Shown piece by piece: positions 4,315 through 63,956 of a stretch of 64,000 nt of DNA; within the stretch, counting starts at the first letter, position 1, and each line of letters opens with the position of its first letter. The stretch covers positions 558,001 to 622,000 of the forward strand of contig NC_043003.1 of the NCBI RefSeq assembly GCF_006345805.1, read 5' to 3'. A model generated the notes under the pieces. It was not told the DNA's origin and searched no databases. It saw only the letters and a program-made list of their open reading frames with translations. The stretch comes from Octopus sinensis. Taxonomy: Eukaryota. Both the position numbers and the translations under genes were made by a program.

Positions 4315-4391
4315 GGAGTGTTTTTTGCAACAGAAAGTAGTTAAGAGGGGTTACCTGTCTTCTGATTTTTTCTTCTCAATTCACTTAAACC

Positions 4392-4397
4392 ATGTCT
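4392..4397 (+). CDS. TnI: Troponin I first coding exon, Met-Ser (6 nt), phase-0 donor
   Basis: ttaaacc ATG TCT | gtaagt. Joins in frame to exon 22979 to give MSEEEEREEAERKKRQEE, a plausible TnI N-terminus. Confidence 0.8.
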
Positions 4398-6672
4398 GTA
4401 AGTATATCCTTTTGTTGGTTCAACTGCATAATTGTACCTTGGATCAATTTTTGTATGGATTTAACTGCATTGAGGTAAGTAAGGGATTGTTTAATTGCAT
4501 GGTGACATCCAAGCTTTTTTTTTTTTTGGCTTGTTTGAAGAGATAGCTTAAAGAATACCAACAACTGTAAATTGTTTTGGTGATATTCTCCTTATATACA
4601 ATTGTTAATTAAAAAGTTTGCACTTAAGTCAACTTTAGATTTTAATTAATTTGAATCTATTTATATTTATCAATATATTTTTACTTTTGCTCATTTGAAT
4701 ATTTAAATAAATGTTTTAATATGTGAACAAACATGCTAAATAAATAGTGTATATGTATGTATGTGTATCTATAAATGTGTGTGTGCGTGTGTGTGTAATA
4801 TATCATCATTTCTCTTTTTTATTTAGCATATTTAATATATTAAAACTATTAATTTTACAAATATGTTTTCTAATTTAAAAATTTAGAAACATATTTCAAA
4901 TTGATTTAAATTTTATTTTATAAAATAAAGACAACAACTTGGTCTTCAGAAAAAAAAAATTAATTAGTTTAGCTTTATTTTTGCAACATAAATAAATAAA
5001 TTGTATGTTTTCAAAACACCATTCTTTAAAGCTACATCTTTGACAACGAGGTATTAAAAAAAAAAAAGGCCACAAAATCATGTTTGTGTCTTTTTACAAT
5101 TCCACTTTGCTGATGACGTCTAAAATGACATTTGAATGTTATTTAGTTCTTTGTACATTTGTTTTTTGGATGTTTTTTTCGTGTATGATTTATTTGAAGA
5201 ACACTTGTTTGTGGTAAAGAAATTCAAAATCTTAGAGTTAAGACAAAAGCATTTACAATAAAAAGCTATGGGTTTGTCTCACCCTTCCATCTCTCTTGTG
5301 ACATTTTTCTTTTTCTACTTCATTATATTTTAAATATTTCATCTCAAATTTTAAGTTTTCATAAACGTAGATTATCTTCTCAATAACTTTGATTAGTCTG
5401 TCTACCTTTTGTTTTTCTGTCACAATGTCCCTTATTTTGGCATTAGTCAAAAACTGTCCAATTCTTTAACCAAAAACTGATATCATTTCCAATATTTAGT
5501 TATTTTTTATTTTCTAAAAACCTTGTTTTTATACATCTGTATATCTCAAGTCAATGGATATCCTCTTTATGGTTATTTGGCTTGCTAGAAATAGCAAACA
5601 ACATTTCTATCCAAATACTTGAATTACATCCTGCTGTCTAAAAAGAAAAAAAAAAGAAACAGAAATTAGTGTTGTCTGAGTTGTAGTCGATCTCCAGGAT
5701 GAAAAATTTTCAAAATGGTCACATCTGGAAAGCCTTTGAGTACAGCTCTGCTTTATCAAGGCTGACTACCTGAGACTAAAGGATAAAATGAACAGCCGCA
5801 TCCATGTTTTAACTAATGTGGCTGCCTCTATGCAAATGCTTGAGCTTCTAGAAATAGTAGCTAAATCCCACCATATTACACCTCTTACCATCTTAAGAAA
5901 GTTAGGACACATTCCATCATGCTATCCATTGTGCTAAATAGATGGAATTGTCATGTTTGGAATGTTTTTAATCATAATTGTGCTCAATGAAACCTCACTT
6001 GGGGTTAAATAACATTCAGACCCATATATGTCTTTTGATGGGATAATGGCATTGACCCTAAGAAAGGGTCAAACTGGGCAATTTCTGATCCCTCACAGGC
6101 ATTGCTGCAGCTTGTGGTTGAGCTTTTTATCATTCAGATTGCTCTGTCAAACGTGAAGCTTATTTCTTCAATGACACGATTGTATATATTTAGAATAACA
6201 GTGTAGGGTAAGTGTGAGAGGCTGGATCTAGCCAGTTTAAGCATAAAACAGGTAGAATTTTGGCCTGGGTATGACTAGTTTAAATGCTAAAGTGTAAAGG
6301 ACTTTGTGTCCAAATTAAGGTCAGTGTTACATATTGGTCACGATGTCATTGAAAATGGCACCAAGACCAATTTTCCCATTGTACTTATGCGAATATTTCA
6401 CTAATTTAATTAGAAAATCAGATTTTATCACTGACATTAAATTAAAAAGGGATCTTGTCACCCACCCACACACATTGTCTTGTAAACACTTTTGAGCTGT
6501 TCTCATGTTCTTTATCTCAATGAAAGTACTGAAGAGGTTGCGAGACCAAAACACTAAAGTCTAACCATAGAAATGAAATAGCGTAACACACACACGCATG
6601 CATGCGTGCACACACACACACACACTATACTTTTACATAAAGAATGGCAACAATGACTTCAAAGTTTCTGCC

Positions 6673-7429: not shown

Positions 7430-7543
7430 TGTATGTATATATATATATATGTATGTATGTATATATATATATATATGTATGTATGCATATATATATATAT
7501 ATGTACGAATATATATATATGTATATATATATATTATATATAT

Positions 7544-7591
<48 letters not shown>

Positions 7592-7781
7592 TATATACAT
7601 ATATATATATATGTATATGTATGTATCATCATCATCGTTTAGCATCCGTTTTCCATGCTAGCATGGGTTACATATATATGTATATACATATACATACATA
7701 TATATGTATACATATAGATGCATATATATGTATACATACATATATATGGATAGATATAGATGCATATATATGTATGTGTAT

Positions 7782-7827
<46 letters not shown>

Positions 7828-7852
7828 GTGTGTGTGTGTGTGTATGTATATA
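7366..7852. repeat. Long compound (TA)n/(TG)n microsatellite; similar blocks at 13920-14062, 23570-24062, 25070-25208
   Basis: Read directly; explains the YI-repeat pseudo-ORFs in the ORF track. Confidence 0.95.
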
Positions 7853-8693
7853 AGCAAGAACACTATAATTCTGTAAGGGAAAGCTTGATGAGAATCTGCT
7901 GTTGAGCGTACACCATAATAATCCCCACCAAATATCTTAAGTAGAAAAATATACGAAATAAAGCAGCATATTGTAATTATGATACTGTAGAATATCTGCC
8001 TGTTTTCTGGAAATATATTCTTTTACTTTATTTCACCCAACATCTTTTCTTATTAAATAACATAACATGAAATGTTTTTTTTATATTCTATACACACACT
8101 GGTGTGTTTAATATATATTTATGGTGAAGTTTTATGCAGCAGTAAATGTTTGGTATTTAATATTTATAATTTGAAGAGGACCAGACTTTTATATGTATCA
8201 TAAAGTCTATGATATATCTAGTGTATGATAGATATAAATATGAAATATATCATAAAACTTTATAATATGTAGTTTTGTACTTGACAGCTCTTAAATCCAA
8301 ATTCTGCAAATGTCTGAGAGCAGCTTTGCATTTTAGCTCAGCCATCTTGTGGTTAATAAAATATTCATAAATAACAAACTGAAGCTATTGGGCATGTGAT
8401 AGTAAATTTATTTTTTAATAAGATGCGTACCTACGATTTGACTTTGTTTCAGTTTTGAAGCAGAGTTGTTACTATGTCTGCCAAATATCTGACTGCTCTT
8501 TCTAGCAGCCCCAGTGCCTGTTTCGAATTTCACTCAATTAGGCCTCCTCCTCCCTCCACCCACCTTCTGCTGCATCAACCCATTTCCAAAATTTTTCTTT
8601 GGTACTGAGTTGTTGCCCTTGTCTTTGGTTGATTTAAGCAATGTTCAACATTGTTTATCTCTTCTATACACAGCTTTGGCCCTGACTCATTAA

Positions 8694-8917
8694 CCCTCTC
8701 GTTACCGTATTTCTGTTGAGATGCTCTGTGTTTCTTTCAATTAATTTTAAATATAACAAAGAATTTAGTAAAATAACTGAGTTATCATTAAGCTGGTTTT
8801 AGGAACATAAATTGTGACTTAGGTTTGGTGGAAGATTTTAATTCAGAACTTTTATGAAAACAAGACATTTGTACTACAGAACGAGAGGCAGTTTCAGCCA
8901 GGTTGGTCACGAAAGGG
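8694..8917. mobile_element. piggyBac-type MITE with TTAA target duplication
   Basis: TTAA|CCCTCTCGTTACC ... GGTCACGAAAGGG|TTAA (TTAA at 8690-8693 and 8918-8921). Confidence 0.8.
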
Positions 8918-9029
8918 TTAAAGCTGTCATGCTTTCCATATTAAGTTTCTAGCATCTAATTTACTTGGTAATTTGGTAGCAACTCTTGTCATGTCTTAGG
9001 TTTAGTTTAAAGATAATCTAATCCATCTT

Positions 9030-9440
9030 AGGTGCAGGAGTGGCTGTGTGGTAAGTGGCTTGCTTACCAACCACATGGTTCTGGGTTCAGTCCCACTGCA
9101 TGGCATCTTGGAGAAGTGTCTTCTACTATAGCCTTGAGCTGACCAAAGCCTTGTGAGTGGATTTGGTGTACAGGAAACTGAAAGAAGCCCATCGTATATA
9201 TATATATATATATATGTGTATGTTTGTGTGTCGGTGTTTGTCACCTTAACATCACTTGACAACCAATGCTGGTGTGTTTACGTCCCTGTAACCTAGCGGT
9301 TTGGCAAAAGAGAATAATAGAATAAGTACTAGGCTTACAAGGAATAAGTCCTCGGGTAGATTTGATCAACTAAAGGTGGTGCTCCAGCATGGCCATAGTC
9401 AAATGACTGAAATGGATGAAAGAATAACAGAATAAAAGGA
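9030..9440 (+). mobile_element. tRNA-derived SINE family A (head ggtgcaggagtggctgtgtggtaag, internal TA/TG microsatellite, tail gctccagcatggcc..gactgaaa)
   Basis: Pol III A/B-box-like head. Homologous copies at ~11525-11956 (+), 18011-18367 (inverted pair), 25208-25510 (+), 37255-37545 (+), 55490-55655 (-), 62820-62975 (-). Confidence 0.8.
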
Positions 9441-9524: not shown

Positions 9525-9642
9525 TGCATGAGATGGATTAATCTTTATGTTAATCCATGTTTGTTGTGTTTTTTGTTGATTGATTTATGCTTTGTTTTGC
9601 TTTTGTTTGTTTGTTATTTCTTGCATGTTTATTTATTGCATG
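9525..9642 (+). promoter_or_regulatory. Three RBFOX-type UGCAUG motifs upstream of cassette exon A
   Basis: TGCATG at 9525-9530, 9622-9627 and 9637-9642; the last two lie inside the 3' splice-site tract. Confidence 0.6.
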
Positions 9643-9649
9643 TTAACAG

Positions 9650-10048
9650 ATTAATGCAAGTTACAAACAACTGGTTACCAAGGAGACATCAAACGGTTGT
9701 GACCCCATTTCATATCATTATAACATTAAAAGAGACATCACATATGGCTGTAATAATGAGGACGATGGGGATGATGAGAAAGATGATGACGATGAAGAGG
9801 ATGATTGTGATAGCGACTTCGAAGAAGGACCTGAGAAATCTGACACATCATTGGAACTTCAAAACCACAATGGAAATTCCGATAATCCTTTTTGCTCTCC
9901 TGTAAAAGACACCTTTGAATCTTGTGCTGAAATTCGAGTAAGTAGTGCAGATCCTGGGCCACTTTCAGCAGCAATCCTAAATAATATGTACCCAAAGGTT
10001 GCCAACGATGATTATAATTATAAGTCTTCAAACCTAACTGAAACAAGG
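9650..10048 (+). CDS. TnI: Candidate TnI cassette exon A (133 aa, acidic: INASYKQLVTKETSNG...EDDGDDEKDDDDEEDDCDSDFEEGPEK...NLTETR)
   Basis: Acceptor tgttaacag|ATT after a U-rich tract. Open frame for 399 nt to donor AGG|gtgagc; a second in-frame donor CGA|gtaagt follows 9937. Phase 0-0. Confidence 0.68.
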
Positions 10049-11049
10049 GTGAGCAAATTAAAAAATATAAATTTCTTTTCGTTATTCCAACAATATTCGC
10101 CTTCATTCTAACATGAGTTCCAAATACTTAGATGTTTTTTTTATATATTTAGTTGAATGTATTTGTTAAACAGGTTCTGTTTTTATAGAGAAGGAATATT
10201 TATTTTGAAGTACTATTTACATTAGAGTCTCATGCCTTTCACTTCAGAACTTGGAGAAGCTGACATTATTTTTCATTCTTAAAGGGGTGCTAAAATAGTT
10301 TAGATTTCATCAATATGGAATCTGATGTTCTTCCAATAATTTCAATGATTTAGAATAAGATTTGATTACGAGGTTATGAAGATTCTCCTCAGTTTTGCCA
10401 AAGTAAACTAGACAAGATCCATACACACACACACACACACATACAATTTTAAATATAAGTAAAAAGGCCATCAAACCAATATGAAGTTGTGTAACTATTT
10501 TTTCCCATCAGATTATCAAATTCCATTTCTTTAATACCAATGGAAAGTAGAGAGTTAGAATGTTATCATGAAGAGCCTTGCATAGAATGAAATCCCACAT
10601 TTATACCCTAACCGAAACGTTATCACTCGTTCTTAATAGTTTGTCCATTTTGTACCAAATTCTTTCAGCCCACCAGTACGCTTATCTCTAAATAAACCTC
10701 TCTGTTTACTGGCATAATTTACAAACTCAGCCTCACCTTTTAATGTGTCTCTTCTTTTCTCTGCTTGAATATGTCAGAGTCATATTAAAAGCCATAAGAA
10801 AACATGAAGGAGACTCAACACTGAGTTGTGTTCAAGAGTTTCCAAAGATTCCATGAAACCCAGCAATGTCAAAACACATGATTAGTTTTATAATTTGGAA
10901 AAAGTAAATTAATTGCATATTATACGGAGTATTGTATCATCTCTAATTTGCTAGAAATGAAATGTGAGTGACTCAAAGGCTTAGAGTTTCGTGTCCAACT
11001 GGGATCATGTCAGAATCCTACCCAAGAAAAGATTGTGGATGTACACACA

Positions 11050-11430
11050 TTATTTTAAAATGTACATCAAGTTTTTCTACACATCTCCCTGTGATGCTCC
11101 TGGACACATCATCAGTGATGTTTCCTGAGGTTATCAGGTGTTTGGGTTCCTTCAACATCAGATGCCATCATCCAGGTAACCCAGCTGGGGGTTGACCAAG
11201 CCCCATCTTGTGTCCAGTTGACACCACCCCTGGTAGCATTGTTCATTCCAGGGCTTTTGCCTCCTGACCCACAGTTATCTTGAGGCAACCATTGTTGCCC
11301 CTACAGTCAACCAGATGACCTTCAGCCTATTGGCCCCTGTGATGCCAAGTATGTTGTAAGTTCTGCTGAAGGATTGGCCTACAACCCCTCTGCATCCTCT
11401 TGCGATGGCATCACTTGCCACTTCCTACTT
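11050..11430 (-). mobile_element. HERO-like (RLE-type) non-LTR retrotransposon 3' end relic
   Basis: Minus-strand GCRGVVGQSFSRTYNILGITGANRLKVI...ASR*LWVRRQKPW resembles the HERO C-terminus (EVGCRGF.GQS..LGI.G..ASRWLW.KR..W); 3' UTR contains CATCACTGATGATGTGTCC. Confidence 0.65.
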
Positions 11431-11524
11431 TCACATCATTCCACCATCTTGGCATGTTTCCACATTTTATTCTCTTTAGCCTCTATTAACTAAAATAAAT
11501 AAATAAAATGAGATAAAAATAAGA

Positions 11525-11680
11525 GTGCAAGGATAGCTGTGTGGTTAAGAAATTCACTTTGCAACCACAAGATTTTGGGTTCAGTCCCACTGTGCAGCAC
11601 CTTGAGCAAGTGTCTTCTACTTTGGTCCAGGACCAAACACTGCTTTGTGAATGAATTTGGCAGACAGAAACTGTGGAGGT

Positions 11681-11716
<36 letters not shown>

Positions 11717-11956
11717 TACATACATACACAGACATATACATACTTGTGTGTATATATGTGTTCATTTCTGTTTGCCTCACCCCTACCCCATCCCTTGACA
11801 AACCACTGTTGGTTTGTTTGTATTTCTGTAGCTTCATGATCCAGCAAATGAAATAAATACAATAAGAACGACTTAAAACCTGTACTGCTGTTGTTTGGTC
11901 CAGCTCGCTCTATGAGGCAGTGCTCCAGTATGGCTGCACAGTACAATGACTGAAAC
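11525..11956 (+). mobile_element. SINE family A copy
   Basis: Same head, internal microsatellite and tail as 9030-9440. Confidence 0.75.
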
Positions 11957-12101
11957 GTTTTTTACTATTTGATTAATTATTCTAATTTATTTTCTTAATT
12001 ATGAACTGCATTGATTACATTAGTTCTAGCAGGTGAGTATCACCATCCAAGCGAAATTCTTTAATCAGCTTCATTAAAAGAGTTGACTATCTCTTCTTTA
12101 G

Positions 12102-12206
12102 GAATCCACTTCACCTGACTCTGGTAAATTTAGTTTTCTTAGTGTTCATACCAATCATTTGGAACCGGTTCCATGGTTGAAAGATCCAAAACAACCAGAT
12201 TACCAG
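12102..12206 (+). CDS. TnI: Candidate TnI cassette exon B (35 aa: ESTSPDSGKFSFLSVHTNHLEPVPWLKDPKQPDYQ)
   Basis: Acceptor ctatctcttctttag|GAA, donor CAG|gtagga, 105 nt, no stop, phase 0-0. Confidence 0.65.
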
Positions 12207-12747
12207 GTAGGAACAACTTAGTCTATGGAATTCTCTCTAAAACTAGCAACTCAAATAATTATTCCAAATTTTTTTTAACAAATTTCAATGCTATCAATCA
12301 ATTAAAATATTTTTGTAAGAAATGTAGGCATTCACGTCTCGGATGATAAATTGCCAGAATTAGTGGAATGTTAGATGAAATGTCTTTTAGTATTTAGTTA
12401 CATCCCTTCGCTTCCCAACAAGGTTTGCCTTGTTTTTTAATCTTTCAAAAGGGATAAAATATGTACCTGGGTTAATTTAATTGATTGTACCCACTGTACA
12501 GAATTTGTGGTCTCCTACCAAAAGTAGAAATCACTATTATTATTATTATTATTATTATTATTAAGGTGGCGAGCTGGTAGACTCATTAGCATACCAGACA
12601 AATTGCTTAGTAGCAATTTATGATAGTTTTTACTTTCTGGTCTCTGCTTCCACCGAGGTCAACTTCGCCATTCGTCAAGTATGGGGTCAATGTAACAGAC
12701 TTACCCCTCCTCTCAAAAACTGCTGGTTCTGTGTCAAAATTTGAAAC

Positions 12748-12795
<48 letters not shown>

Positions 12796-13161
12796 CATTA
12801 TTATTGTCATTGGGTGATGAGTTTCTGACAAAATGCCTCATCATGTTGTTTAGTTACAGGACCCTCTACAATCTGAATCCATATGTTTTGAGGTTCAGCT
12901 TTACTTTTTAACCTCATGAGGTCAGAAAAATAGTAACCAGCTGAATATTGAGGGAGAGATGTACCTGATTGTCCCCATTCTCAAACTTCTTGGCTATGTT
13001 AGTTATATTATAATGACATTGTAATCAATGAAAATTACTATTCAATATCAACATTATTATCTCTAATATCAACATTATTATCTCTAATATCAACATTATT
13101 ACTATTGTTAAGAACAGTTTTCTATATATGGCTGATGATAATAACCAAAATTTAATTTTAG

Positions 13162-13239
13162 ACAAATAAAAGGCATGGCTCTCCTGAGAAGAATCTTATT
13201 CCTAACAGAGGTTCAAACTTGAAGGATATACAAAAGAAA
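13162..13239 (+). CDS. TnI: Candidate TnI cassette exon C (26 aa: TNKRHGSPEKNLIPNRGSNLKDIQKK)
   Basis: Acceptor tttaattttag|ACA, donor AAA|gtaaga, 78 nt, no stop, phase 0-0. Confidence 0.6.
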
Positions 13240-13923
13240 GTAAGAACAATAAATGTCCAGATTTAATCTTTTTGGAAAGGAAAACTTTTTGTAGTTCATC
13301 TCCCTCACCAACTGTTATGGAATTCTTCTTGTCTCAGACAAGTCAGTTTAAAGTTTAATTGTTAGCACAAGAAAATGGGTTATCATCCAGATATGAAAAA
13401 AATATTTAAATATTTCATCCAACAGTTTATGTACAATTATCTGATATACGCATAAAACTCTAGAAAATTAGCTATAAAGTTATCTCAGATTCATGTATAT
13501 TTGTATAGACATGAATATATGTGTATATATATGTTTTCACATATACACACCTATACCTAAAATAAACTTGAATTAGTTGAACCTCAGTTATTTTTATACA
13601 CCACAGTGAAACTTTAAACAGATGTAAATATATGCATGGAAAGTTTCAATGTAAAGGCTTTAAAACATCTGTAGCTTGATTACTTTAAATTTGTTTTAGA
13701 TTTTAAACACATGCTGTGTTTTGTGTATGCACACACTCACACTCACACAATACATACACACAATACATATAATGAATATGCATCTGTGTGTGTTTGTATG
13801 ATTTTGTTCATTTTTGGCATCTTCCAAGTTAATTTATAAAATTTCTAAGAAGCAGTTAAAAAGGAACAAAATCAAAACTATTTTCCTTATGTTTAGATCA
13901 AATAAACAAAAAACAAATATATT

Positions 13924-13954
<31 letters not shown>

Positions 13955-13965
13955 GTATATATATG

Positions 13966-13997
<32 letters not shown>

Positions 13998-13999
13998 AT

Positions 14000-14060
<61 letters not shown>

Positions 14061-14898
14061 ATATTGAAGAAAGGAAACAAATGATTAGTTTTCAAGTGAT
14101 TGTGTTAAGAGATATCGTGATAAAATTATGTAATGGTATTTTCAGCTAAAATATTTCGACTCATTTATTGTCCGGCTATTTTGGGCTGGCAAATAATACC
14201 CTGCTGTTAAATCTATCTTAGTAGCTTACAGAATGTTTACAGAACTTGCTATTTTCATCCTGCTGTTTGCTAGATATTGGCTCCACCTATCTCTTTCACT
14301 ATGTAATCTAACACTGTTTTCCTTTTCTTATCTATATCATAATGTAACGAACGGAAAACTATAAAATACGCAGATATCTTAGCCATGCATATGCTTCATT
14401 AGTATTGTGTTTATTCATGTATTCAATGTGTAACTCTTACCATTAGAATTTCCTCGAGCGTCACTGCTTCGGTGTTAGTGAGTTCAATCCTTGGACGAGT
14501 CATTTGTGTTATTCAAGGTAGATTGTATTACTTACCTCATCCATCCTCACAGGTAAAATAGGCTTCAGTTCATGGTTGGGTGGTTAGTAGTTGGAAAGGC
14601 GTTCAGCTTGAAAGATATTTTTTGCAACAATCTATGTACAAATATCTAAATAAATAAAGTAAAAGAAAAATGAAAAAGGCAGGGAACATGAAAAAGGCAG
14701 GGAACATGAAAAATGGACGTTAAAAAAATGGAAAGGAAACATTATTTAGTTTTTTCTCTCTTGCTTTTTTAGAAATAGTTTTCTCCACCCTATTAAATTA
14801 CTAACTGAATCAAGATGTTAGATATTGAACATTTAGAGCAAAAGTAGATCTCTCTTACTTTCTGTCTTAACAAGAACTAAACATTTTTCCTCGTACAG

Positions 14899-14964
14899 TT
14901 TGAAGCTGTGAGTAAACAAGAACCAAAAGAATTTGGTAAAAGAAATATAAATCTTCAAGAAAAC
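14899..14964 (+). CDS. TnI: Candidate TnI cassette exon D (22 aa: FEAVSKQEPKEFGKRNINLQEN)
   Basis: Acceptor tttttcctcgtacag|TTT, donor AAC|gtaagc, 66 nt, no stop, phase 0-0. Confidence 0.65.
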
Positions 14965-16811
14965 GTAAGCATCCTTGAGGCATTTGTTCGATTTTATTCA
15001 TTGTAAAGAACATAAAATAGCAAATCCTTCAGAATTGAGTAGAGTTATTTTTTTTTAATTTCAAGAAAATTGCGAAGCTTTTAAGTTTTTTATTGATTTT
15101 ATTTATTTGTACTGTTACAGATTTATCGATTTAGAATAATGCAAAAACAGCAATGAACGCATAGAATCCCTAGTGTGCCAGAGAAAATGCTTGGCAGCAT
15201 TTCTTCCTGCTTTATGTTCTCTGTTCAGATTCTGCTAAGGTTGACTTTGCCTTTCATCCTTCCAGGGTTGATAAAATAAGCATCAGTTGAGCACAGAAGG
15301 CAGCAAAATCACCCACCCCCCTCCTCAAAGCTGCTGGCCTTGTACCTATAGTTTTAGAGACGTGCCCCTAAATGACAAAACCAGGTGTTTTATAATATTT
15401 CTTTGGTTTGGTGCTTTCTGGGTTGACTTTTGTTCTTCACATTTCTCGTCAGTAAAATGTGAATTTAAGTGAGTGTCACATTTGGCAAGGTCTTGACTAA
15501 ATATGGTTTCCATTCTAGAGATAAAAAGATTTTTTTTTTACCTGGGTTTGCTGTTAGATTAAACAAGTCAAGTGAATACATAGAAGATTTCTTGCAGTTT
15601 CATGCCAATATCACTCTGGAATTGGTCCAGTTGATTATATCAACTCCACTACAAATTATTTGTTATCAGAGATGCCGTGTCGAAGCAGATTAAGTGGTAA
15701 TGTTGTTGTTATTATAAATGCTTGGATACATTTGCTGCTGTAAGAGTTGGACTTCATTTTGAGCTGATCCCTTATCTTGATTTTGCTGATGTTTCCAGCA
15801 GTTAAAAAAGCTAACAGTACTTGAAGGATGTTAATCTATTCAGTATCTGTACTTTTCAAGGTATAGGTGGGATTTAGCTGTTAGTCACATAATGGCAGCT
15901 TGAATCAAGGATAATGCCAACGAGCTCAATGGATTATTGTATATACTGAAATAAAAAAAATTCTGTATTTATATCTATGCAAAATTTTCAATAGTTATTA
16001 AGTTAATTTCTGTTTAATTTTCTGCAAATTGAAATTAGCTGCATCTTTGAATAAGGTGCTGAGCCTCAGGAAAAGACTAATGGTTCTTGGAGTGTTGTCA
16101 ATGAGTCTTTGCAAAATTTGGTAGGAATCTTTCTTCAAATTTTGAATCCTGCTGAAGTCAATTTGGTCTTTCATCATTTGGGGGGGGGGTCAATAAAATA
16201 AAGTACAACAGCAACAACTATTATTATTATTATTATTATTATTAATATATAATTATTATTATTATTATTATTATTGGGGATGTTCTTATTTCTGTATTGA
16301 GGCCTAAAAATACAGATCTTCAAAATATTGTTTCATTATATTAAAAGTTACGATTATGTCTTTGGTTTTTGTTCTATGGAAACAATTATTCAAAGTCTAA
16401 CACTCAAACACATGTCATGACAAGCAGAATAATGTCTGCAGTCAATGCAATTGACTGACCCCTCCCCTCAAAATTACTAGCCTTGTGCCAAAATTTGAAA
16501 CAATGATTATTACTAGAAAGTTCTGTAAATTCCATGCTTTATAAATGTTCTTATTTTGATGCCTAAATTTACAGATCTTCCCCACATTCATTTATTAGGT
16601 TAAAGATTTCAACTCCATAGTTATGGTTGTTTAGAGCATAAAACCTCAACTACTGTCGCTATGTTAAATATTTAGATTATGTCCATGATTTCATCCCCTA
16701 TTAATGTATTTCAGTATTTTAGACAATACTCTTTCTATCTACCTGTATTTTTTATAAGTCCAATATTATTATTATTATTGTAATATTGTATTCTTAATTT
16801 ACTTTCCCCAG

Positions 16812-17799
16812 GGTTTAATTTCTTCCTTTAAAGTGCCATCACGAACCCTAATTAACAGTGATTCAATAAAAGACTATAAATCCAAACTAGAAAGTTCCTT
16901 AAGCAAAACTAAGATTCAATCCCATCACAATAAACTGTCGACTGAAAGTGGAGTTAAAAACCCTTCCATTCTCGAAGATCTTACTAATTCTAAAAATAAA
17001 AATTCCTCCTATAATAATAGTAATAATGATAATATTAATAATGATAATAATCGTTATTATAACAACAACAACAATATAATCACAAAGAATAATAACAACA
17101 ACAATAATTCTGGTCTGAGAGTAAGAGAAAAGACAGTCAAAGTTTGCAATAAATGGCCACCAGAAAAAGCTACCAAGGTGCATGATATTTCCAAACGCCA
17201 CGATGATTCTGAGACTGATTCTTCCCCACATTGTGAACCTGACACAAAGCCAGCTGTTCTTGTTAGCCAGAAAAGTGTGGTCAAACGATGGCCTCATGCT
17301 CAAACGGCACAGATTTCTATGGCAAAGCGTCCAGAAAAATTGACAAGTTGGTCATCAGGTGTAAATGGAAATGGTTCCATTACACAGCGCCTAGATTACA
17401 AAACGGACGTGCGAGGGAGATGGCCCCCAGAAGTTGATCTCAAACAAACTGCTAGAGAAAGCATATCATCAGCATTAGCTCAGAAGATTTACAAACCACC
17501 TTCGAAAGATGCAACAGGTGTGTCAGGCCAAAATTTAAGAAAAGATGTAATTAGTGAAACAGCTGTTGTGCAAGTTTTTTTACAGACACCAGAAAATACT
17601 CGATTAAAAGACGGAACATCCACTTGTAAAGTAATCCCTAAATCTCAAGAAAATAACGAACTGATTATTCCTCATCACTCATATCATAACGGACATGTAC
17701 CGGAAACCAGAAGCTCTTTACTTACTAACCTGCATGCTGTTAAAGATCAAAATCTTTCATATACATCTTTTGTACCTTCTACTAACCAACACCAAAGCA

Positions 17800-17830
<31 letters not shown>

Positions 17831-17903
17831 CAGTGGGGATGAGGTCAAAGGCCAAACTGTATCATCTGCTCATTGTCTTATTCATTGGCAAAGTGGAAAG
17901 AAA
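16812..17903 (+). CDS. TnI: Candidate TnI giant cassette exon E (364 aa, S/T/N/K-rich, poly-N and poly-D tracts, three [KR]WP[PH] motifs)
   Basis: Acceptor atttactttccccag|GGT is in frame with the ORF-track ORF 16833..17990, the longest ORF in the window. Donor AAA|gtaagt at 17904 is phase 0. Length 1092 nt = 364 codons. Confidence 0.75.
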
Positions 17904-18817
17904 GTAAGTTGTGCATTTTCATTCAATGTCCTTTTTCGTTTTCGTTTTTTCTCCCATTTACAGGGAGAATTCATTAATTTTCTTTCATAACTACAATGGA
18001 ATTTGTATTGTTACTCTTTACTCTTTTACTTGTTCCAGTCATGTGACTGCGACCATGCTGGAGCACCACCTTTAGTCGAGAAAATCGACCCCAGGACTTA
18101 TTCTATTGGTCTCTTTTGGCGAACTGCTAAGTTACGGGGGCATAAACACACCAGCAAAGCCTTGTCAGGGGATTTGGTAGACGGAAACTGAAAGAAGCCC
18201 GTTGTATATATATGTGTGTGTGTGTCCCCGTAATTTAGCGCTTCGGCAAAATAGACTGATAGAATAAGTACTAGGCTTACAAAGAATAAGTCCTGGGGTC
18301 AGTTTGCTTGAGTAAAGGCGCTGCTCCAGCATGGCCACAGTCAAATGACTGAAACAAGTAAAAGAATATATATATATAAGTGCTATAGATGGACCGCATC
18401 TATAGCACTTATTCAGCATTACCTGACACCTTTGGGTCTCAATGACACCATTACCTCTCATAACCTATATATATATATATATACATAAAATGTTATACAT
18501 AGACTCATTGTAATAAAATTGCAAAACCTATTCAATCTGTATTTTATTTTATTTACAAATTCCACTGTATCTGGGAGGCTTTATACATGTTGAATGAAAG
18601 GATATAGTTTATCGAAGGTGAATGTTTATATTGCAGCTTCAGTTTCACACCATCGTCATCTCCAGATGCCAGTAGTGTTTTTGCCTGAAGATCACCAGAG
18701 TGGTGTGAAAGTCAAGTCACACACTAAAGATTCAGTTTTGATAAACCATATTCTCTAAAACATGTATTAGGCCCTCCTTTTCCATCCATTCAATGCAATT
18801 AAGTATTTGTGTATGCA

Positions 18818-18948: not shown

Positions 18949-19636
18949 TCTTCAGGGCCGTCACCTTCGATCTATATAGTACCATGTCCCTCTTGCATTT
19001 CTTGAGGCTCTTCTTTTCCTCTGCGGCTTTCAAGAGCTTCTCCATCCGGTATGCCTCAAAGTCTTTCTTTAGTTGCTGACGAATCACTCAGCTGAGAAGG
19101 GAATATTCAAGGTGGTCTTAATGGCATAAGGGATGTGCTCAAGGGAAGGTTGAACAGGACCACCCGTGCCAACCTCATCAACAGTACAGTTCTACCTGCA
19201 ATGTTGTATGGTAGTGAAACATGGGCTACCACAAAGAGAGAAGAGCAGAGACTGGTAATGGCTCAAAGAGCCAGGGAAAGGTCAATGCTTGGTATCTCGT
19301 TGAGAGAGCACATCAGTAGCAAGATCATCAGAAAGAAGTCCGGCATGAGGGATGTAATCACAGAGTATACACGCAACAAGTTTAGATGAGCTGGACACAT
19401 CGCCCGGCTCACTGATAATTGGTGGACCCACGCAGTTGTCGAGTGGTACCCACGTGAGCAGAAACGACTACCTGGAAGGCCTCCACGACGGTGGAGTTAC
19501 GATTTTAGGAGGACAATTGGGATCACGTGGATGAGAAAGGCGCGATCCAGAGAGGAGTGGACAGCGTGCTGTGACCAGCGGTGTCAAATGGACGCCTGAC
19601 GGACTGGTCGGTCAAGGTGATCAAGGTGAAGGTGAT
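18948..19636 (+). mobile_element. RTE-clade LINE, 5'-truncated with an inverted 5' segment, inserted in (TA)n
   Basis: + strand LPAMLYGSETW...FR*AGHIAR...EWYPREQKRLPGRPPRRW to stop at 19597-19599, with an (CA)AGGTGA repeat tail. 18948-19087 encodes IRQQLKKDFEAYRMEKLLKAAEEKKSLKK on the minus strand. Confidence 0.85.
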
Positions 19637-22978: not shown

Positions 22979-23026
22979 GAAGAAGAGGAACGCGAAGAGG
23001 CCGAAAGGAAAAAGAGACAGGAAGAG
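22979..23026 (+). CDS. TnI: Troponin I exon, EEEEREEAERKKRQEE
   Basis: ttgttgtgtag|GAA ... GAG|gtaaga, 48 nt, phase 0-0. E/R/K-rich helix typical of invertebrate TnI N-termini. Confidence 0.88.
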
Positions 23027-23910
23027 GTAAGAATCCAGATTTAATTTTCAATAATTTTTCAAAGAATTTCATACATTATACATCATATTATTCACAGTAG
23101 ATTTACATTATTTTTTTTTTCTTCATTTTCGTTAGACAACACCATTATCATATCACTACATATTTTTTAAAACTCTTTTTTTTTTTTTACTTTGTAAATG
23201 TTTATCATCACTCATCATTCAGTTATATTAGTCTATGATATTATTATTTTTTCCTTCTTACACCCCCCACCCACCCATCTATCCTTTCCTTATATTTGTT
23301 GCACTTCTACATCAGTCTTAGGTGAAAGCTATGTCGCTGATCTCTTAGTTAGATGCACCCTTTCTATGCTGTGTAAAATGTGAGGTGTTTTACTTTGTTT
23401 TGTTGGTGTTGTAGAGCAACAGAAATAGTTTAATTATAAAAAAAACAACAAAAAACAATGCATGATCTTTTGTCTTTCTTTTCTGGTTCCTTTTTTTTTC
23501 AGAATAAAGGTTGATGTATTTTTTTTTAATAAAAGTTAGCTACATTAATAATGTTACATGTGTTGTGTCTCTGTGTATATGTGTGTGTATGTGTAAATGT
23601 GTGTATGTATGTATTCATGTATAAATACATACTTGTGTATATATTTAAATATATATGTACTGTGGGAATATGAGTGTATGCATGTATATTTGTAGGTACA
23701 TGTGTGTGTATATATATATATGTCATCATGAATATATGTATATATTTATATATGGATATATATATATCCATATATAAATATATACATATATATATATGTA
23801 TATATGCATGTGTGTATGTGTTTATGTATATAGATATGTGTATATATTTGTATGTAAAAATATCTAGATGTATAGATATTGTATATGTGTATATATATGT
23901 GTATATCATG

Positions 23911-24038
<128 letters not shown>

Positions 24039-25107
24039 GCACATACACACACATATATATTTACATGTTAATGATCAAACTGTGTCCAGAAATCATGATT
24101 ATTCATTTCAAAAATATTTCCCCCACCCCCTATCGATGTTATGTTAGTTTCATCTCTACATGGTCCTATGTTACCCCTCTTCTGTCCCCTGTCAAAATTA
24201 ATCCAATTAAGGGACGATTCATAAAAACTTAAGATATACATTTAAACAAAAATAATATATTCTATAAAAAATTTAGAATTAAGCAAAATCCCTAATAGTA
24301 AAAAAAAAAGATTATATACAATAAAAAGAACCCAAACAAAACTGAAATATAAATAATAAAAGTAACATGATTGAATACCTATTAATTATGCATATTAATT
24401 ATTATGATGATTATTATTATTATCAATTTTTTTTAAAACTAAATAATGGTAAATCATTTTTGGTCTGTGAGATTTGTATTGTAACTTAACAAATACTGTC
24501 ATTGCTATGTACAGTTAGTACTTCATTTTTATGACCATCTGCTATTTGGAATTGCCATTATGCAGGTTCTACTCTTTAATTTTTTTTTACATTTTATTTT
24601 TTTTTACAAAAATATATATTTTCCATTCACCTATTTTCACTAATCACTCTTAGATTTTTACTACTTACTAAAAATAATTAGCAAATAATATAATGATATA
24701 TCTTTTTTTATATAAATATTATCATTTTAGTTTTGCATGTATTGTCTTTGATTTAACTATAAATCCAATTCTCATAGCTCATCATATTTATTCTGATGAA
24801 GTGGTTCACTTTGTTGTTTACATTTGTCAAGTGACAAAACTAACATCTCCATAACAAGCTAAACTTAGATTTATTTTTGATTACCTCGTGTGTAACCAAT
24901 ATTATTTTTCATATCATGCTGGGCTTCTCTGCCACACTGGCTACGATAGTTTAAACTTATAACGAAATCAATTAGGACCAATATTTATCTTGCAGTGTAG
25001 AAACTTATCCTATGTCATGGATATCATTCTGATGAATAAAGTTTATCAAGATTGGTGTGCATGTAATTTATATATATATATACATACATTCATACACACC
25101 TATCTTT

Positions 25108-25510
<403 letters not shown>

Positions 25511-27452
25511 ATATATATATATCACCTGTTGTGACCTACCTATTGGATGTTATACACTGCTAGTCACAATGCACTTCCAGGTCTTATTTCGTTGTACCCT
25601 TTTCTTCCATTTGGCCCAAGACTATATCAGATTACAATTTGATTACAGTTAAACAAATTGTTTAACTAAATTGTTTTTTCTATCATTGTGGAGGCCTTTT
25701 TTTTTATCTCTTGGATACCAGTCAGCAACTGCATGGGTCCACCTGTTGTCTGTGAACCTTACGACATGTCTGGCCCAATTAAACATTTTTACAGTAACCT
25801 GATTGGCCATGACACAAAAGGTTCATGGAAAGAGTTATGCTAGGAATATCAATGTGAGAGCATATATCCAAAACAAGGTCACTCGACATTATAGTTTCAG
25901 GAAAATGAAAAGGTTTAGTAAAAAATCTATAAAAAAAAGTCAATATTGTGGCACTGTGAACCCATCCATTAAGTTTCAATGATTGGAATTTTCAGACCAA
26001 ATTCTTTAGCAAGTGCTACATAAATATTTTTACAAGTTACAGTTTGATCTTATCTGACACAACTGCAAATTTATAAATTTTGCTTTTCTTGAATTTTTTT
26101 CTGACTGCTTTCATAAATTGAGCTAAAAATACCATTATCATAAAGAAAGTGAGAAATCAATAAATGAACTCCAAATTACTTTCTTAGAAAAACTGAAGAT
26201 CAATGTATTCAAGTAGTAATTCCTTAAATATTAGATAATATTTTATATGATGTTTAAACAGATTACTGGAAGCAACTAGCACAATGCTCATATATCACGT
26301 ATTGTTTTGAATACAAAGATGTCAACAGCTTCAATTAACTGAAATATAACCAAAACAGAAAAATTACAAAGTCTCAAAGACTCTTTACAGATGTAATTAG
26401 ATGGTTTTAATATTACCTGCCATTCAACAATGAGTGAAATCTGTAATCTGATAAGTCTTGAAACTCTGCTCAGCAAAAATGGAAATAATTCTGGCATTCA
26501 TTGATGCCAAGTAACATTTGGGAATGTATAGTGAAGGCATCAAAATGGACAGTTCTGATTATAGCTACATATGTTTCCATAGTGTGGCTAGTTATACAAT
26601 AATCATTAATATTACATGGTGTTGCACAACTTTGCATTATTACATAATATCACCATTTCATCAGGCATTATTCATTATTGAACCTTTTATCAGCAAAAAT
26701 CAAACTGTGAAGAAATATGTCTGCTGATAAATATATTGAAAGTGGGAGTTGTCGAATTGGGACAGGAGATAATTTGAAGTGCAGTCAATCAATTTCATTT
26801 AATTAGTAAAGTAACAAAAACTGTAGTAATAATTGTAGGTGTCAAAGTTGATGAGGGAGTGGTCATGACAACCTTACACCATTTAACAGATAAATGCATT
26901 TACCAGCCAAAAGTTTACCAATGACATTTACAACAATAAACTTTCAACAGTCAACACAATAGATTTTACATTATGTATATATAATTTATGATTTAGACAT
27001 ATATATATAAATATAACACACTCGCACACTGTGTCAGACAGATACATACAAATGCATGATACAGTTTTATATGGTCTCTGATTGTTTAGATTTTAGTTGC
27101 AAATACAAGATGTGTGAAAACGTGACTTGAATTGATTGTGGAAAGTAGGTGTGGGAGGTCAGAAATCATTTGAATGATGAGCTCTGACAGGTGAGAGAAG
27201 ACAGAATTAAGATGATTGTGTTGCAGTATATCATACAGGAAGACATTGTACTGCAAGAAATGTAGGTGAATACCTCAGTTAGCGCTCCATGGGATAAACC
27301 CGGCTAACAGTATGAGAACAGCTTTGGAGCTCTGATGAGAATAGGTTTAGGTTGCTCTATTAATTAATTGATCAATTATGCATACAAACCTTTGCAAGAT
27401 GCAGATAGAGTTCCTCAAGCCATTCGAAACATAAGTAAACATATAAAGTTAT

Positions 27453-40636: not shown

Positions 40637-40732
40637 GCTGCCCGGCGAAGGCACGAGGAGGAAGAGAAGAAAAAGAAGGGCAAAAGAAAGGGTTTGGGTG
40701 GCCTGTCTCCAGAGAAGAAGAAACTACTCAAG
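40637..40732 (+). CDS. TnI: Troponin I exon, AARRRHEEEEKKKKGKRKGLGGLSPEKKKLLK
   Basis: ctctctgcccag|GCT ... AAG|gtactg, 96 nt, phase 0-0. KRKGLGGLSPEKKK is recognisable molluscan TnI sequence. Confidence 0.95.
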
Positions 40733-56939: not shown

Positions 56940-57060
56940 AAACTTATTATGCAAAAGGCCGCTGAAGACTTGAAAAATGAAGCTAAACGGAAAGCTGAAG
57001 AAAAAGAACGCTTCATTTGCGAGAGGGTTGAGCCATTGATTACCGAGGGTCTAAATGAAG
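56940..57060 (+). CDS. TnI: Troponin I exon, KLIMQKAAEDLKNEAKRKAEEKERFICERVEPLITEGLNE + 1 nt (TnC-anchoring helix region)
   Basis: tctgtttgtag|AAA ... GAAG|gtaggc, 121 nt, phase 0-1. KLIMQKAAEDLKNEAK matches molluscan TnI as I recall it. Confidence 0.96.
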
Positions 57061-63855: not shown

Positions 63856-63956
63856 CACAGTTGCAAGATCTGGTAAAGAAACTCCATGCGAAAACAGCAG
63901 AGCTTGAAGAAGAAGTCTATGACTGTGAATTTAAAATCAGAAGACAAGAATTTGAG
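63856..63956 (+). CDS. TnI: Troponin I exon, (A)QLQDLVKKLHAKTAELEEEVYDCEFKIRRQEFE (TnT-binding coiled coil); gene continues beyond the window
   Basis: ctttttacag|CA CAG ... GAG|gtactc, 101 nt, phase 1-0. LEEEVYD.E.KIR.Q.FE is the troponin-family heptad region. Confidence 0.96.

What the first reader, a model, noticed from the sequence alone, without database searches (positions are those of the whole stretch)
9650..17903. Hidden array of five symmetric exons that could add ~580 aa to the troponin I N-terminus
Seen: exons 9650-10048 (133 aa), 12102-12206 (35), 13162-13239 (26), 14899-14964 (22) and 16812-17903 (364). Each has canonical AG/GT sites, no stop codon, a length divisible by 3 and phase 0-0, matching the flanking exons. 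Five such hits in a stop-rich intron are unlikely by chance. The sequence is acidic, S/T/N/K-rich and probably disordered. It is unlike the E/R-rich extension of the scallop 52-kDa TnI as I recall it. Inference: a modular giant TnI isoform family, possibly cephalopod-specific and possibly non-muscle or specific to one muscle type.
Basis: partly seen in the sequence, partly recalled or inferred. Interest (0 to 1): 0.9.

Follow-up and report, generated by a model that had tools for sequence, protein, structure and literature searches.

The report
Giant octopus troponin I cassette exons
The five open stretches are real, conserved coding exons that insert up to 580 disordered amino acids into giant (about 900-1000 aa) isoforms of the octopus troponin I gene, but they are already in NCBI's predicted gene models, under misleading names, rather than hidden.

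Summary
Observation confirmed exactly. All five stretches are open, 3n long, phase 0-0 and flanked by AG/GT.

With splice and length thresholds set to include the five, the + strand of this intron holds 5 such loci against about 0.5 expected. Only c5 is significant on openness alone.

The window is Octopus sinensis.
- X1 (XP_036360316.1, 998 aa) carries all five exons.
- X4, X11 and X15 skip subsets.
- In the 16 models examined, c1 and c5 are always present and c2-c4 are cassettes.

The models carry a Pfam Troponin domain but are named "histone-lysine N-methyltransferase", "DDB_G0283697" and similar.

The long isoforms start from E/R-rich exons upstream of the window, not from the "MS" exon at 4392. 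That exon makes the short roughly 190-aa TnI and skips the array, as a cDNA from a relative shows.

Two other unidentified, presumably cephalopod genomes keep all five exons in the same order, frame and splice context:
- Exon identity is 86-94% against 62-81% for introns.
- All 6 exonic indels are 3n.
- dN/dS is 0.38.

The insert has no known domain, is predicted disordered, and carries conserved WPP motifs. Its function is untested. No paper describing it was found.

The parts
4339..4397 (+). Proximal alternative first exon of the TnI gene: 5'UTR plus ATG TCT, donor GTAAGT. It starts the short TnI isoform and splices past c1-c5 to 22979. The 5' limit is approximate.
   Evidence: Sequence. 88% DNA identity to L001 5707-5877, where the exon encodes ATG GCC. 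cDNA contig L004 from a relative joins this exon directly to the T2 and T3 orthologues.
9650..10048 (+). c1: 133-aa acidic exon (pI 4.1), phase 0-0. Present in all 16 long isoform models examined.
   Evidence: Orthologues at L001 7537-7920 and L002 726-1112 have the same acceptor (gcatgttaacag|AT) and donor (|GTGAGCAA) context. dN/dS 0.31.
12102..12206 (+). c2: 35-aa cassette exon, phase 0-0. Skipped in isoforms X9, X11, X13 and X15.
   Evidence: Orthologues at L001 8443-8538 and L002 1588-1662, with 3n length differences. dN/dS 0.34.
13162..13239 (+). c3: 26-aa basic cassette exon (pI 10.6), phase 0-0. Skipped in X13 and X15. It is the best conserved of the small exons (...NLKDIQKK).
   Evidence: 65-68% aa and 78% DNA identity to L001 8815-8892. 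L002 1918-1995.
14899..14964 (+). c4: 22-aa cassette exon, phase 0-0. Skipped in X4, X11 and X15.
   Evidence: Orthologues at L001 9592-9660 (69 nt) and L002 2646-2711 (66 nt), with conserved acag|TTTGAAGC and |GTAAGCAT.
16812..17903 (+). c5: 364-aa exon, phase 0-0, inside the longest open stretch of the window (16758-17987). Present in all 16 long isoform models and spliced to 22979.
   Evidence: Orthologues at L001 9965-10930 (P0031) and L002 3009-3944 (P0047). dN/dS 0.42. No Pfam domain. AlphaFold mean pLDDT 37.
17145..17165 (+). First conserved motif, C-N/S-K-W-P-P-E, within c5.
   Evidence: Invariant C, K, W, P, P, E across three species.
17271..17300 (+). Second motif, KSVVK-x-WP-x-A, within c5. 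The Trp is lost in L002.
17400..17486 (+). Third WPP motif plus the most conserved block of the array, K.DV..RWPP..D.KQTARESISSA[LI]AQK.
   Evidence: 22 of 40 aligned columns are invariant in three species. 84% DNA identity to L001 10458-10524.
17001..17108 (+). Asn-rich tract (AAT/AAC repeats) inside c5. It is absent from both other species.
17802..17831 (+). Run of ten Asp (GAT repeats) inside c5. It is absent from both other species.
22979..23026 (+). T2: 16-aa E/R-rich exon (EEEEREEAERKKRQEE), phase 0-0. It is the acceptor for both c5 (long isoforms) and the proximal first exon (short isoform).
40637..40732 (+). T3: 32-aa exon (AARRRHEEEEKKKKGKRKGLGGLSPEKKKLLK), phase 0-0. Skipped in X7.
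56940..57060 (+). First exon of the conserved TnI core (KLIMQKAAEDLK...), phase 0-1.
   Evidence: Pfam Troponin, E = 2.3e-7..
63856..63956 (+). Next TnI core exon (AQLQDLVKKLHAK...YDCEFKIRRQEFE). The gene continues beyond the window.
   Evidence: The gene spans 145.5 kb in GCA_006345805.1.

Best explanation
**What it is.** The five stretches are genuine, conserved, protein-coding cassette exons of the Octopus sinensis troponin I gene, a locus of about 145 kb.

**Two classes of product.**
- A proximal first exon (ATG TCT at 4392-4397) splices straight to the 22979 exon and gives the ordinary TnI of about 190 aa.
- Transcripts that begin further upstream, outside the window, encode a 135-235-aa E/R-rich extension. 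They splice over the proximal exon into c1, then optionally c2, c3 and c4, then c5, then 22979 and the TnI core. These products are 898-998 aa, about 114 kDa for X1.

**What the insert looks like.** c1-c5 add 497-580 aa. The sequence is fast-evolving, hydrophilic and predicted disordered. It has an acidic head (c1), a basic mini-exon (c3), and a long basic tail (c5) with three or four W-P-P motifs and one strongly conserved block, KQTARESISSA[LI]AQK.

**Most likely mechanism (inferred, not shown).** The TnI core anchors the protein in the troponin complex on the thin filament. The insert acts as a long flexible spacer or docking arm between the E/R-rich extension and the core. Its length and charge pattern are tuned by including c2-c4. 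The conserved WPP-type short linear motifs bind an as yet unknown partner.

**Shown here:** exon reality, boundaries, frames, cassette pattern in RefSeq models, conservation and purifying selection, lack of a known domain.

**Inferred:** promoter usage, thin-filament location of the long forms, tether or docking function.
For: - X15 (XP_036360332.1) was found by exhaustive HMMER.
- **Cassette pattern.** Across 16 models, c1 and c5 are always present and c2, c3, c4 are variably present.
- **TnI membership.** The Troponin domain spans aa 859-984 of X1, E = 3.8e-34. The gene record is hit by PF00992 and spans 145.5 kb.
- **Upstream origin of the long forms.** The N-terminal 235 aa do not map in the window. 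In L001 their last exon lies upstream of the proximal first exon.
- **Short isoform.** cDNA L004 joins the proximal exon to T2 and T3, skipping the array.
- **Conservation in L001.** All five exons are collinear between the proximal exon and T2, open, 3n long, with conserved splice contexts.
- **Conservation in L002.** The same holds. Exon identity is 86-94% against 62-81% for introns. 6 of 6 exonic indels are 3n against 25% of 57 intronic indels (P about 2e-4). dN/dS is 0.38, with dS 0.24 and Fisher P = 2e-8.
- **Conserved properties.** Per-exon charge is conserved between species, as are the motifs.
- **Disorder.** AlphaFold mean pLDDT is 37. No Pfam domain was found.
Against: - No RNA reads or peptides could be examined here.
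- The RefSeq proteins are computational (Gnomon) models. c5 is longer than a short read, so the link between the upstream extension, c5 and the TnI core in one molecule rests on separate junctions, not on a full-length cDNA that I have seen.
- dN/dS of 0.38 indicates only moderate constraint.
- Most of the sequence is 32-39% identical between octopus and L001 (c3 is 65%), so much of it may matter only as length and charge.
- One WPP motif has lost its Trp in L002.
- The taxa of L001 and L002 are unknown.
- No partner, tissue or location is known, so the tether or docking mechanism is conjecture.
Confidence: 0.8

Rival explanations
1. The exons are real but belong to a separate gene nested in or overlapping the TnI locus. 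The RefSeq models that fuse them to TnI would then be chimeric predictions.
For: - The RefSeq names do not mention troponin.
- The models are computational, and no full-length cDNA containing c5 plus the TnI core was available here.
- The insert has no similarity to any TnI outside this group.
Against: - c1 opens one codon after a stop with no usable ATG. None of the five exons has a start or in-frame stop.
- All are phase 0-0, matching both flanking exons.
- c5 ends at a strong donor conserved in three species rather than a stop.
- The array keeps its place between the E/R exon or proximal exon and T2 in L001.
- 16 of 16 models join c5 to 22979.
- No other gene is called within 10 kb of the 145-kb gene.
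Confidence: 0.1
2. The exons are spliced only as low-level noise or as non-productive variants. The long isoforms would have no function of their own.
For: - Fast sequence evolution: 32-39% aa identity between octopus and L001 for most of the array.
- No known domain.
- Species-specific poly-N and poly-D expansions are tolerated in c5.
Against: - Open frames of 508-580 codons are maintained in three genomes.
- All exonic indels are 3n.
- Exons are markedly more conserved than introns.
- dN/dS is 0.38 with P = 2e-8.
- An invariant motif block is present.
Confidence: 0.06
3. The five stretches are chance open frames or pseudo-exons in a long intron, or remnants of a transposable-element ORF.
For: - c2-c4 are individually unremarkable as open frames (12-27% chance).
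- The intron is full of repeats and holds a LINE reverse-transcriptase fragment at 19096-19386.
Against: - 5 loci are observed against about 0.5 expected.
- P for c5 is about 3e-6 window-wide.
- The stretches are single copy in the window.
- There is no transposon-related Pfam hit.
- They match RefSeq coding exons exactly and are conserved across species.
Confidence: 0.01

Closest known systems
RefSeq (Gnomon) models of the same gene in Octopus sinensis: XP_036360316.1 (X1) to XP_036360335.1 (X18)
   Same: These are identical sequences. Skipping variants are in X4, X9, X11, X13 and X15.
   Different: The models are named after low-complexity look-alikes (H3K79 methyltransferase, bromodomain, myb-like, Dictyostelium DDB_G...), not troponin I. 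No paper in the searched library cites them.
Long molluscan TnI with an E/R-rich N-terminal extension (scallop '52K' TnI and its shorter splice form). Recalled from memory of Ojima, Nishita and Tanaka's work, and not verified in the library.
   Same: A TnI core is preceded by a long, alternatively spliced, charged N-terminal extension. The octopus long isoforms carry such an E/R-rich part (aa 1-235 of X1, E+R 47%).
   Different: c1-c5 are a second, compositionally different module (E+R 9%, S/T/N/Q-rich) inserted between that extension and the core. It roughly triples the size. No gastropod or bivalve protein matched c5 in the exhaustive search.
Hypervariable N-terminal region of vertebrate fast skeletal troponin T (TNNT3), built from small alternatively spliced exons
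   Same: An array of small cassette exons in the N-terminal variable region of a troponin subunit generates many isoforms. Exons 4-8 of TNNT3 are alternatively spliced (abstract of PMC2447309, listed).
   Different: It is a different subunit. The TnT exons are tiny and acidic. Here two large exons (133 and 364 aa) are constant within the long isoforms and only the three mini-exons vary.
Insect flight-muscle heavy troponin components (Pro/Ala-rich extension of Drosophila TnI exon 3; Lethocerus TnH). Recalled from memory.
   Same: A muscle-type-specific, disordered extension is added by alternative splicing to a thin-filament regulatory protein. It is proposed to reach other filament components.
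   Different: There is no sequence or compositional similarity, since the octopus insert is not Pro/Ala-rich. Tissue specificity of the octopus isoforms is unknown.

Membership tests
Troponin I gene product (Pfam PF00992 Troponin) | The protein that contains the exons carries a Troponin domain | tested here: met
   X1 (P0034) aa 859-984 hit PF00992 at E = 3.8e-34, 118 bits against a cut-off of 26.2. Window exon 56940-57059 alone gives E = 2.3e-7. The gene record is flagged PF00992.
Troponin I gene product (Pfam PF00992 Troponin) | The exons are physically joined to the TnI core in real mRNA or protein | not testable with these tools
   Only computational RefSeq models show the c5>22979 junction. 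No reads, long cDNAs or peptides with c-exons were available. The one cDNA found (L004) is the short isoform.
Alternatively spliced cassette exons | Symmetric phase (0-0) and length divisible by 3, so that inclusion or skipping keeps the frame | tested here: met
   Met in O. sinensis, L001 and L002. Flanking exons end and start in phase 0.
Alternatively spliced cassette exons | Both inclusion and skipping forms exist | tested here: met
   c2, c3 and c4 are each present in some RefSeq isoforms and absent in others. The whole array is skipped in the short-isoform cDNA of a relative. This is evidence from models and a cDNA, not read counts.
Protein-coding sequence under purifying selection | Open frame kept across species, 3n indels, exons more conserved than introns, dN/dS below 1 | tested here: met
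   Exon identity is 86-94% against 62-81% for introns. 6 of 6 exonic indels are 3n. dN/dS is 0.38 (0.31-0.42 per exon), Fisher P = 2e-8.
Scallop-type E/R-rich TnI N-terminal extension | Glu/Arg-rich composition | tested here: not met
   E+R is 9% in c1-c5 against 47% in aa 1-235 of X1. c1-c5 are therefore a different module. The E/R extension itself lies upstream of the window.
Xin-repeat-like actin-binding motif (a lead from memory: DV..RW..E) | Match to the Pfam Xin repeat model or a solved relative | tested here: not met
   No Pfam hit other than Troponin at E up to 10. PDB profile searches gave only chance matches that do not cover the WPP residues.
Transposable-element ORF | Multiple copies, or a reverse transcriptase, transposase or gag domain | tested here: not met
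   The stretches are single copy in the window and have no such Pfam domain.

The most novel reading that the evidence does not exclude
The c1-c5 module is an innovation of coleoid cephalopods. It turns troponin I into a thin-filament-anchored scaffold of about 110 kDa. Its conserved WPP motifs and the KQTARESISSA[LI]AQK block would dock a second structure, such as the thick filament, dense bodies or a signalling enzyme, in a particular muscle type or even in non-muscle cells. That would be a functional counterpart of the insect heavy-troponin bridge, arrived at independently.
Probability: 0.2. Interest if true: 0.7.

Novelty: new variant of a known kind. Interest (0 to 1): 0.45.

Why it matters
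Troponin I is normally a small regulatory protein of about 20-30 kDa. A conserved family of 100-115-kDa isoforms with a lineage-restricted 500-580-aa disordered insert would be the largest TnI described, as far as I could find.

It suggests an extra thin-filament-linked function in cephalopod muscle, whose regulation is poorly understood.

There is also a practical point. The public annotation calls this troponin gene a histone methyltransferase, bromodomain or myb-like protein. Transcriptome and proteome studies of octopus are therefore likely to mislabel one of the main muscle genes.

The exons themselves are not a discovery, because they are already in RefSeq models. What this work adds is the recognition of what the gene is, the cross-species evidence for selection, and the conserved motifs.

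Tried and rejected
- **Word-index protein search with c5.** No hit, although the RefSeq isoforms exist. Only the exhaustive HMMER search found them.
- **Pfam on c1, c5 and their L001 orthologues.** Nothing.
- **PDB profile searches with the c5 alignment and the WPP block.** Only chance hits: a viral capsid at E = 0.8, and SPMIP5 at E = 0.009 arising from two identical weak stretches that do not cover WPP. Rejected.
- **Xin-repeat resemblance recalled from memory.** Register is off by one and there is no model match. Rejected.
- **Transposon origin.** Rejected.
- **Exact look-ups of alternative constructs.** I tried 'MS'+c1..c5+core, 'MS'+c1+c5+core, the short 'MS'+core, and eight constructs joining an E/R extension directly to 22979. 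None is in the collection. This is negative and not decisive, because other parts of those isoforms may differ.
- **Locus look-up for X15 and X1.** X15 is not on record, and the X1 gene is too long for DNA to be returned. The upstream exons of O. sinensis could therefore not be read.
- **dN/dS between O. sinensis and L001.** dS is saturated (1.4-2.4) and the alignment is unreliable. I used the L001-L002 pair instead.
- **AlphaFold.** Run on a single sequence only, so low confidence is weak evidence for disorder.
- **Literature searches** for cephalopod or mollusc TnI isoforms, the XP accessions and the RefSeq names. Nothing relevant. The invertebrate-troponin review PMC6529277 is not held.
- **Rfam on the whole window.** No family.
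- **Search for a second set of TnI core exons in the window.** None.

Full report

Yes. The five coordinate pairs give stretches of 399, 105, 78, 66 and 1092 nt. Each is divisible by 3, free of in-frame stops, preceded by AG and followed by GT. They translate to 133+35+26+22+364 = 580 aa.

The flanks are as described. At 4392-4397 the sequence reads ATG TCT|GTAAGT, behind a TATA-like TATTTAAG. At 22979-23026 there is an AG-flanked exon encoding EEEEREEAERKKRQEE|GTAAGA.

**2. Is it more than chance?**

Outside the candidates, 5.8% of trinucleotides in the intron are stops.

- c5 (364 codons, inside a 410-codon open stretch that is the longest non-repeat ORF of the window) has P about 3e-6 even after correcting for every start on both strands.
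- c1 is only suggestive.
- c2-c4 would be open 12-27% of the time.

I scored donors and acceptors with a simple consensus scheme. With thresholds set to the weakest of the five (post hoc), the + strand of intron 1 contains exactly these five loci. Its - strand has 1, the remaining 41 kb has 0 (+) and 1 (-), and the upstream 4.3 kb has 0 (+) and 1 (-).

That gives an expectation of about 0.5 and Poisson P = 2e-4. None of 300 order-3 Markov simulations reached 5. Candidates that appear at looser thresholds are microsatellite-derived ([10 protein letters not shown]) or hydrophobic junk.

The five are single copy in the window and lie between SINE-like repeats. Four of the five have higher G+C than both flanks; c4 does not. 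c1 and c5 show codon-position asymmetry typical of coding DNA.

**3. Gene context in the window**

The first hits Pfam Troponin at E = 2.3e-7. A further N-terminal exon lies at 40637-40732, encoding AARRRHEEEEKKKKGKRKGLGGLSPEKKKLLK.

Two TnI proteins of cephalopod type, P0001 (from the cDNA contig L004) and P0002, read MA + EEEEREEAERK[KR]RQEE + AARRRQEEEE... + KLIMQ.... This confirms the canonical short isoform, in which the proximal first exon is joined directly to the 22979-type exon.

**4. What the exons are: exact matches to RefSeq**

The word-index search with c5 found nothing. The exhaustive HMMER search of 1.84 billion representatives found two proteins.

- P0030 is 100% identical over all 364 residues. 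It is XP_036360332.1, 'uncharacterized protein DDB_G0287625 isoform X15 [Octopus sinensis]', 915 aa. Its order is a 235-aa E/R-rich N-terminus, then c1, then c5, then the 22979 exon, the 40637 exon and the TnI core.
  - The version with all five exons (998 aa) is XP_036360316.1, isoform X1.
  - c1+c2+c3+c5 is X4.
  - c1+c3+c5 is X11.

Sixteen isoform models of this gene were retrieved and tabulated:

| Exon | Status across the 16 models |
|---|---|
| c1, c5 | present in 16 of 16 |
| c2 | skipped in X9, X11, X13, X15 |
| c3 | skipped in X13, X15 |
| c4 | skipped in X4, X11, X15 |

The rest of the variation lies in the upstream E/R-rich exons, plus skipping of the 40637 exon in X7.

X1 has a Pfam Troponin domain at aa 859-984 (E = 3.8e-34) and no other domain. 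The gene spans 145.5 kb in assembly GCA_006345805.1.

The window is therefore O. sinensis, and the 'hidden' exons are annotated coding exons. What is hidden is the gene's identity. The products are named histone-lysine N-methyltransferase H3K79-specific, bromodomain-containing, myb-like or DDB_G..., evidently from low-complexity similarity.

From my knowledge of the NCBI pipeline, not checked here, alternative Gnomon isoforms are reported only where RNA-seq or transcript alignments support the variant introns. The cassette pattern probably reflects real junction reads. The full-length combinations are inferred.

**5. Where the long isoforms start**

Residues 1-235 of X1 and X15 do not map anywhere in the window. 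In the related locus L001, the last E/R-rich exon (77% identical to aa 176-235, ending ...EERRKR|GT) lies about 4.7 kb upstream of the proximal first exon.

The long isoforms therefore start upstream of the window and splice over the proximal 'MS' exon into c1. Constructs starting 'MS'+c1 are not in the collection.

**6. Conservation**

The second hit, P0031, is a 322-aa ORF on a 208-kb contig of ENA assembly ERZ21867824. I fetched 21 kb around it as L001. L001 contains, in the same order and strand:

| Feature | L001 coordinates | Identity to window |
|---|---|---|
| E/R exon | 865-1044 | 77% aa (to X1 aa 176-235) |
| proximal first exon (ATG GCC) | about 5712-5773 | 88% DNA |
| c1 | 7537-7920 | |
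| c2 | 8443-8538 | |
| c3 | 8815-8892 | |
| c4 | 9592-9660 | |
| c5 | 9965-10930 | |
| T2 | 12878-12925 | 100% aa |
| T3 | 18444-18539 | 97% aa |

Every orthologue is open, 3n long, AG/GT-flanked, and keeps the local splice context. Examples are gcatgttaacag|AT and |GTGAGCAAAT for c1, and acag|TTTGAAGC and |GTAAGCAT for c4.

Amino-acid identity to octopus is only 32-39%, or 65% for c3. dS is saturated.

A third genome was found through P0047, which is 80% identical to the L001 c5. It comes from Logan contigs L002 and L003, from runs ERR12921336 and ERR12945498. It aligns with L001 through exons and introns. In that comparison:

- The five exons are 86-94% identical, against 62-81% for the six intron segments.
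- All six exonic indels are multiples of three (3, 21, 3, 3, 21, 6), against 25% of 57 intronic indels (P about 2e-4).
- dN/dS is 0.38 overall (dS 0.24, dN 0.092, Fisher P = 2e-8) and 0.31-0.42 for each exon.

A spliced cDNA contig from run ERR868086 (L004) is 98-100% identical to L001's exons. It joins proximal exon > T2 > T3 > core, so the array is skipped in the short isoform.

The taxa of L001, L002 and L004 are not known to me. I take them to be cephalopods because their TnI N-terminal exons are nearly identical to those of the octopus.

**7. What the insert looks like**

- **Composition.** c1-c5 are hydrophilic (GRAVY -1.1) and S/T/N/Q-rich (27-35%), with E+R only 9% against 47% in the upstream extension.
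- **Charge.** The per-exon charge pattern is conserved. c1 is acidic (pI 4.1 and 4.3), c3 basic (10.6 and 10.0) and c5 basic (8.8 and 9.3).
- **Fold.** AlphaFold on c5 alone gives mean pLDDT 37 and no fold. This fits disorder, but it is a single-sequence prediction.
- **Motifs.** Three-species alignment shows islands of invariance: C[NS]KWPPE, KSVVK.(W/S)P.A, and K.DV..RWPP..D.KQTARESISSA[LI]AQK. L001 and L002 have a fourth ...RWPPVS.
- **Repeats.** The poly-Asn and poly-Asp tracts of octopus c5 are absent from the other two species.
- **Relatives.** No Pfam family and no solved structure is related. No protein outside these genomes matched c5.

**8. How it most likely works**

*Shown.* This is a two-start gene. 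The proximal exon gives the short TnI. Upstream E/R-rich exons lead into a constant c1...c5 frame with three optional mini-exons, all in phase 0, feeding the same TnI core.

*Inferred.* The Troponin domain should place the long forms in the troponin complex on the thin filament. The insert would then be a flexible polyampholyte arm of about 65 kDa between the E/R extension and the core. Selection acts mainly on its frame, length, charge pattern and a few short linear motifs, which is the usual signature of a spacer or docking region.

I put about 0.8 on 'genuine conserved coding cassette exons of long TnI isoforms'. I put roughly 0.4 on the specific tether or docking role.

Rivals are a chimeric gene model (0.1), splicing noise (0.06) and chance or transposon ORFs (0.01).

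**9. Comparison with what is known**

- **Closest in fact:** the RefSeq models themselves.
- **Closest in kind:**
  - the long molluscan TnI with an E/R-rich extension (scallop 52K; from memory). The octopus has this as well, upstream, and c1-c5 are a distinct second module.
  - the cassette mini-exons of the N-terminal variable region of fast troponin T (PMC2447309, abstract).
  - the insect flight-muscle heavy troponin extensions (from memory).

Defining features tested are in the membership table.

**10. Verdict**

The finding is not a hidden feature, because it is already annotated, though mislabelled, and I found no paper describing it.

I rate it a new variant of a known kind, an alternatively spliced N-terminal extension of TnI. 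Interest is moderate at 0.45. It would rise if long-read or proteomic data show a tissue-specific TnI of about 110 kDa.

Noticed in passing
whole gene (window 4339-64000 and beyond); RefSeq XP_036360316.1 to XP_036360335.1: The RefSeq product names of this Troponin-domain gene are spurious: 'histone-lysine N-methyltransferase, H3 lysine-79 specific', 'bromodomain-containing protein DDB_G0280777', 'myb-like protein AA', 'uncharacterized protein DDB_G0283697/DDB_G0287625'. They presumably arise from low-complexity E/R, N and D runs. Expression or proteome studies that use these names would miss that this is troponin I.
   Followed up: partly
upstream of window position 1; L001 865-1044: The long isoforms begin with a 135-235-aa E/R/A-rich extension, itself made of several optional exons. 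It is encoded outside the window. In L001 its last exon lies about 4.7 kb upstream of the proximal first exon. The O. sinensis exons could not be read because the gene is too long for the locus tool.
   Followed up: partly
window 63856-63956 (codon TGT near 63925): The TnI core exon encodes ...EEVYDCEF..., whereas eight of eight other mollusc or cephalopod TnIs inspected have YDWE (TGG to TGT). The Cys is also in the RefSeq proteins. No alternative copy of this exon exists in the window. A mutually exclusive exon beyond 64000 cannot be excluded.
   Followed up: partly
window 4398-4497: The first 100 nt of the intron after the proximal first exon are about 90% identical to L001, including a second GAG|GTAAGT at about 4467. 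A 5-nt indel argues against coding. This may be an alternative donor or a regulatory element.
   Followed up: partly
window 23336-23415 (also 24459-24511, 24574-24621, 39108-39190, 39381-39409): These are conserved non-coding blocks, 79-93% identical to L001, in the introns after the 22979 exon and before the 40637 exon. The blocks translated (23336-23415, 39108-39190, 39381-39409) have stops in all frames. They are candidate splicing or transcriptional regulatory elements.
   Followed up: partly
window 17001-17108 and 17802-17831: Coding microsatellites lie inside c5: an Asn-rich AAT/AAC tract and ten GAT (Asp) codons. They are specific to O. sinensis and absent from L001 and L002. The exon tolerates in-frame repeat expansion.
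   Followed up: yes
window 19096-19386 (+): A 97-codon open frame (…LYGSETWATTKREEQRL…) looks like the C-terminal part of a non-LTR (LINE) reverse-transcriptase ORF. There was no significant Pfam hit. It is a degraded retrotransposon fragment in the intron.
   Followed up: no
window 9029-9436, 11525-11710, 18011-18373, 25208-25511, 37231-37554, 55494-55655, 62824-62966; also 12535-12792, 15163-15350: Several families of dispersed SINE-like repeats (67-92% identity between copies) fill the introns, including an inverted pair at 18019-18368. TA/TG-type microsatellites give long spurious open frames (IYIYIY...).
   Followed up: no
window 40637-40732: RefSeq isoform X7 skips this 32-aa exon, which encodes the conserved GLGGLSPEKKKLLK segment. 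This exon too is treated as a cassette in the models.
   Followed up: no
tool behaviour (against 24, 38): The word-index protein search returned no O. sinensis protein for c5 or for the TnI N-terminus, although 17 or more RefSeq isoforms with identical sequence are in the same collection. Only the exhaustive search and exact look-ups revealed them.
   Followed up: no
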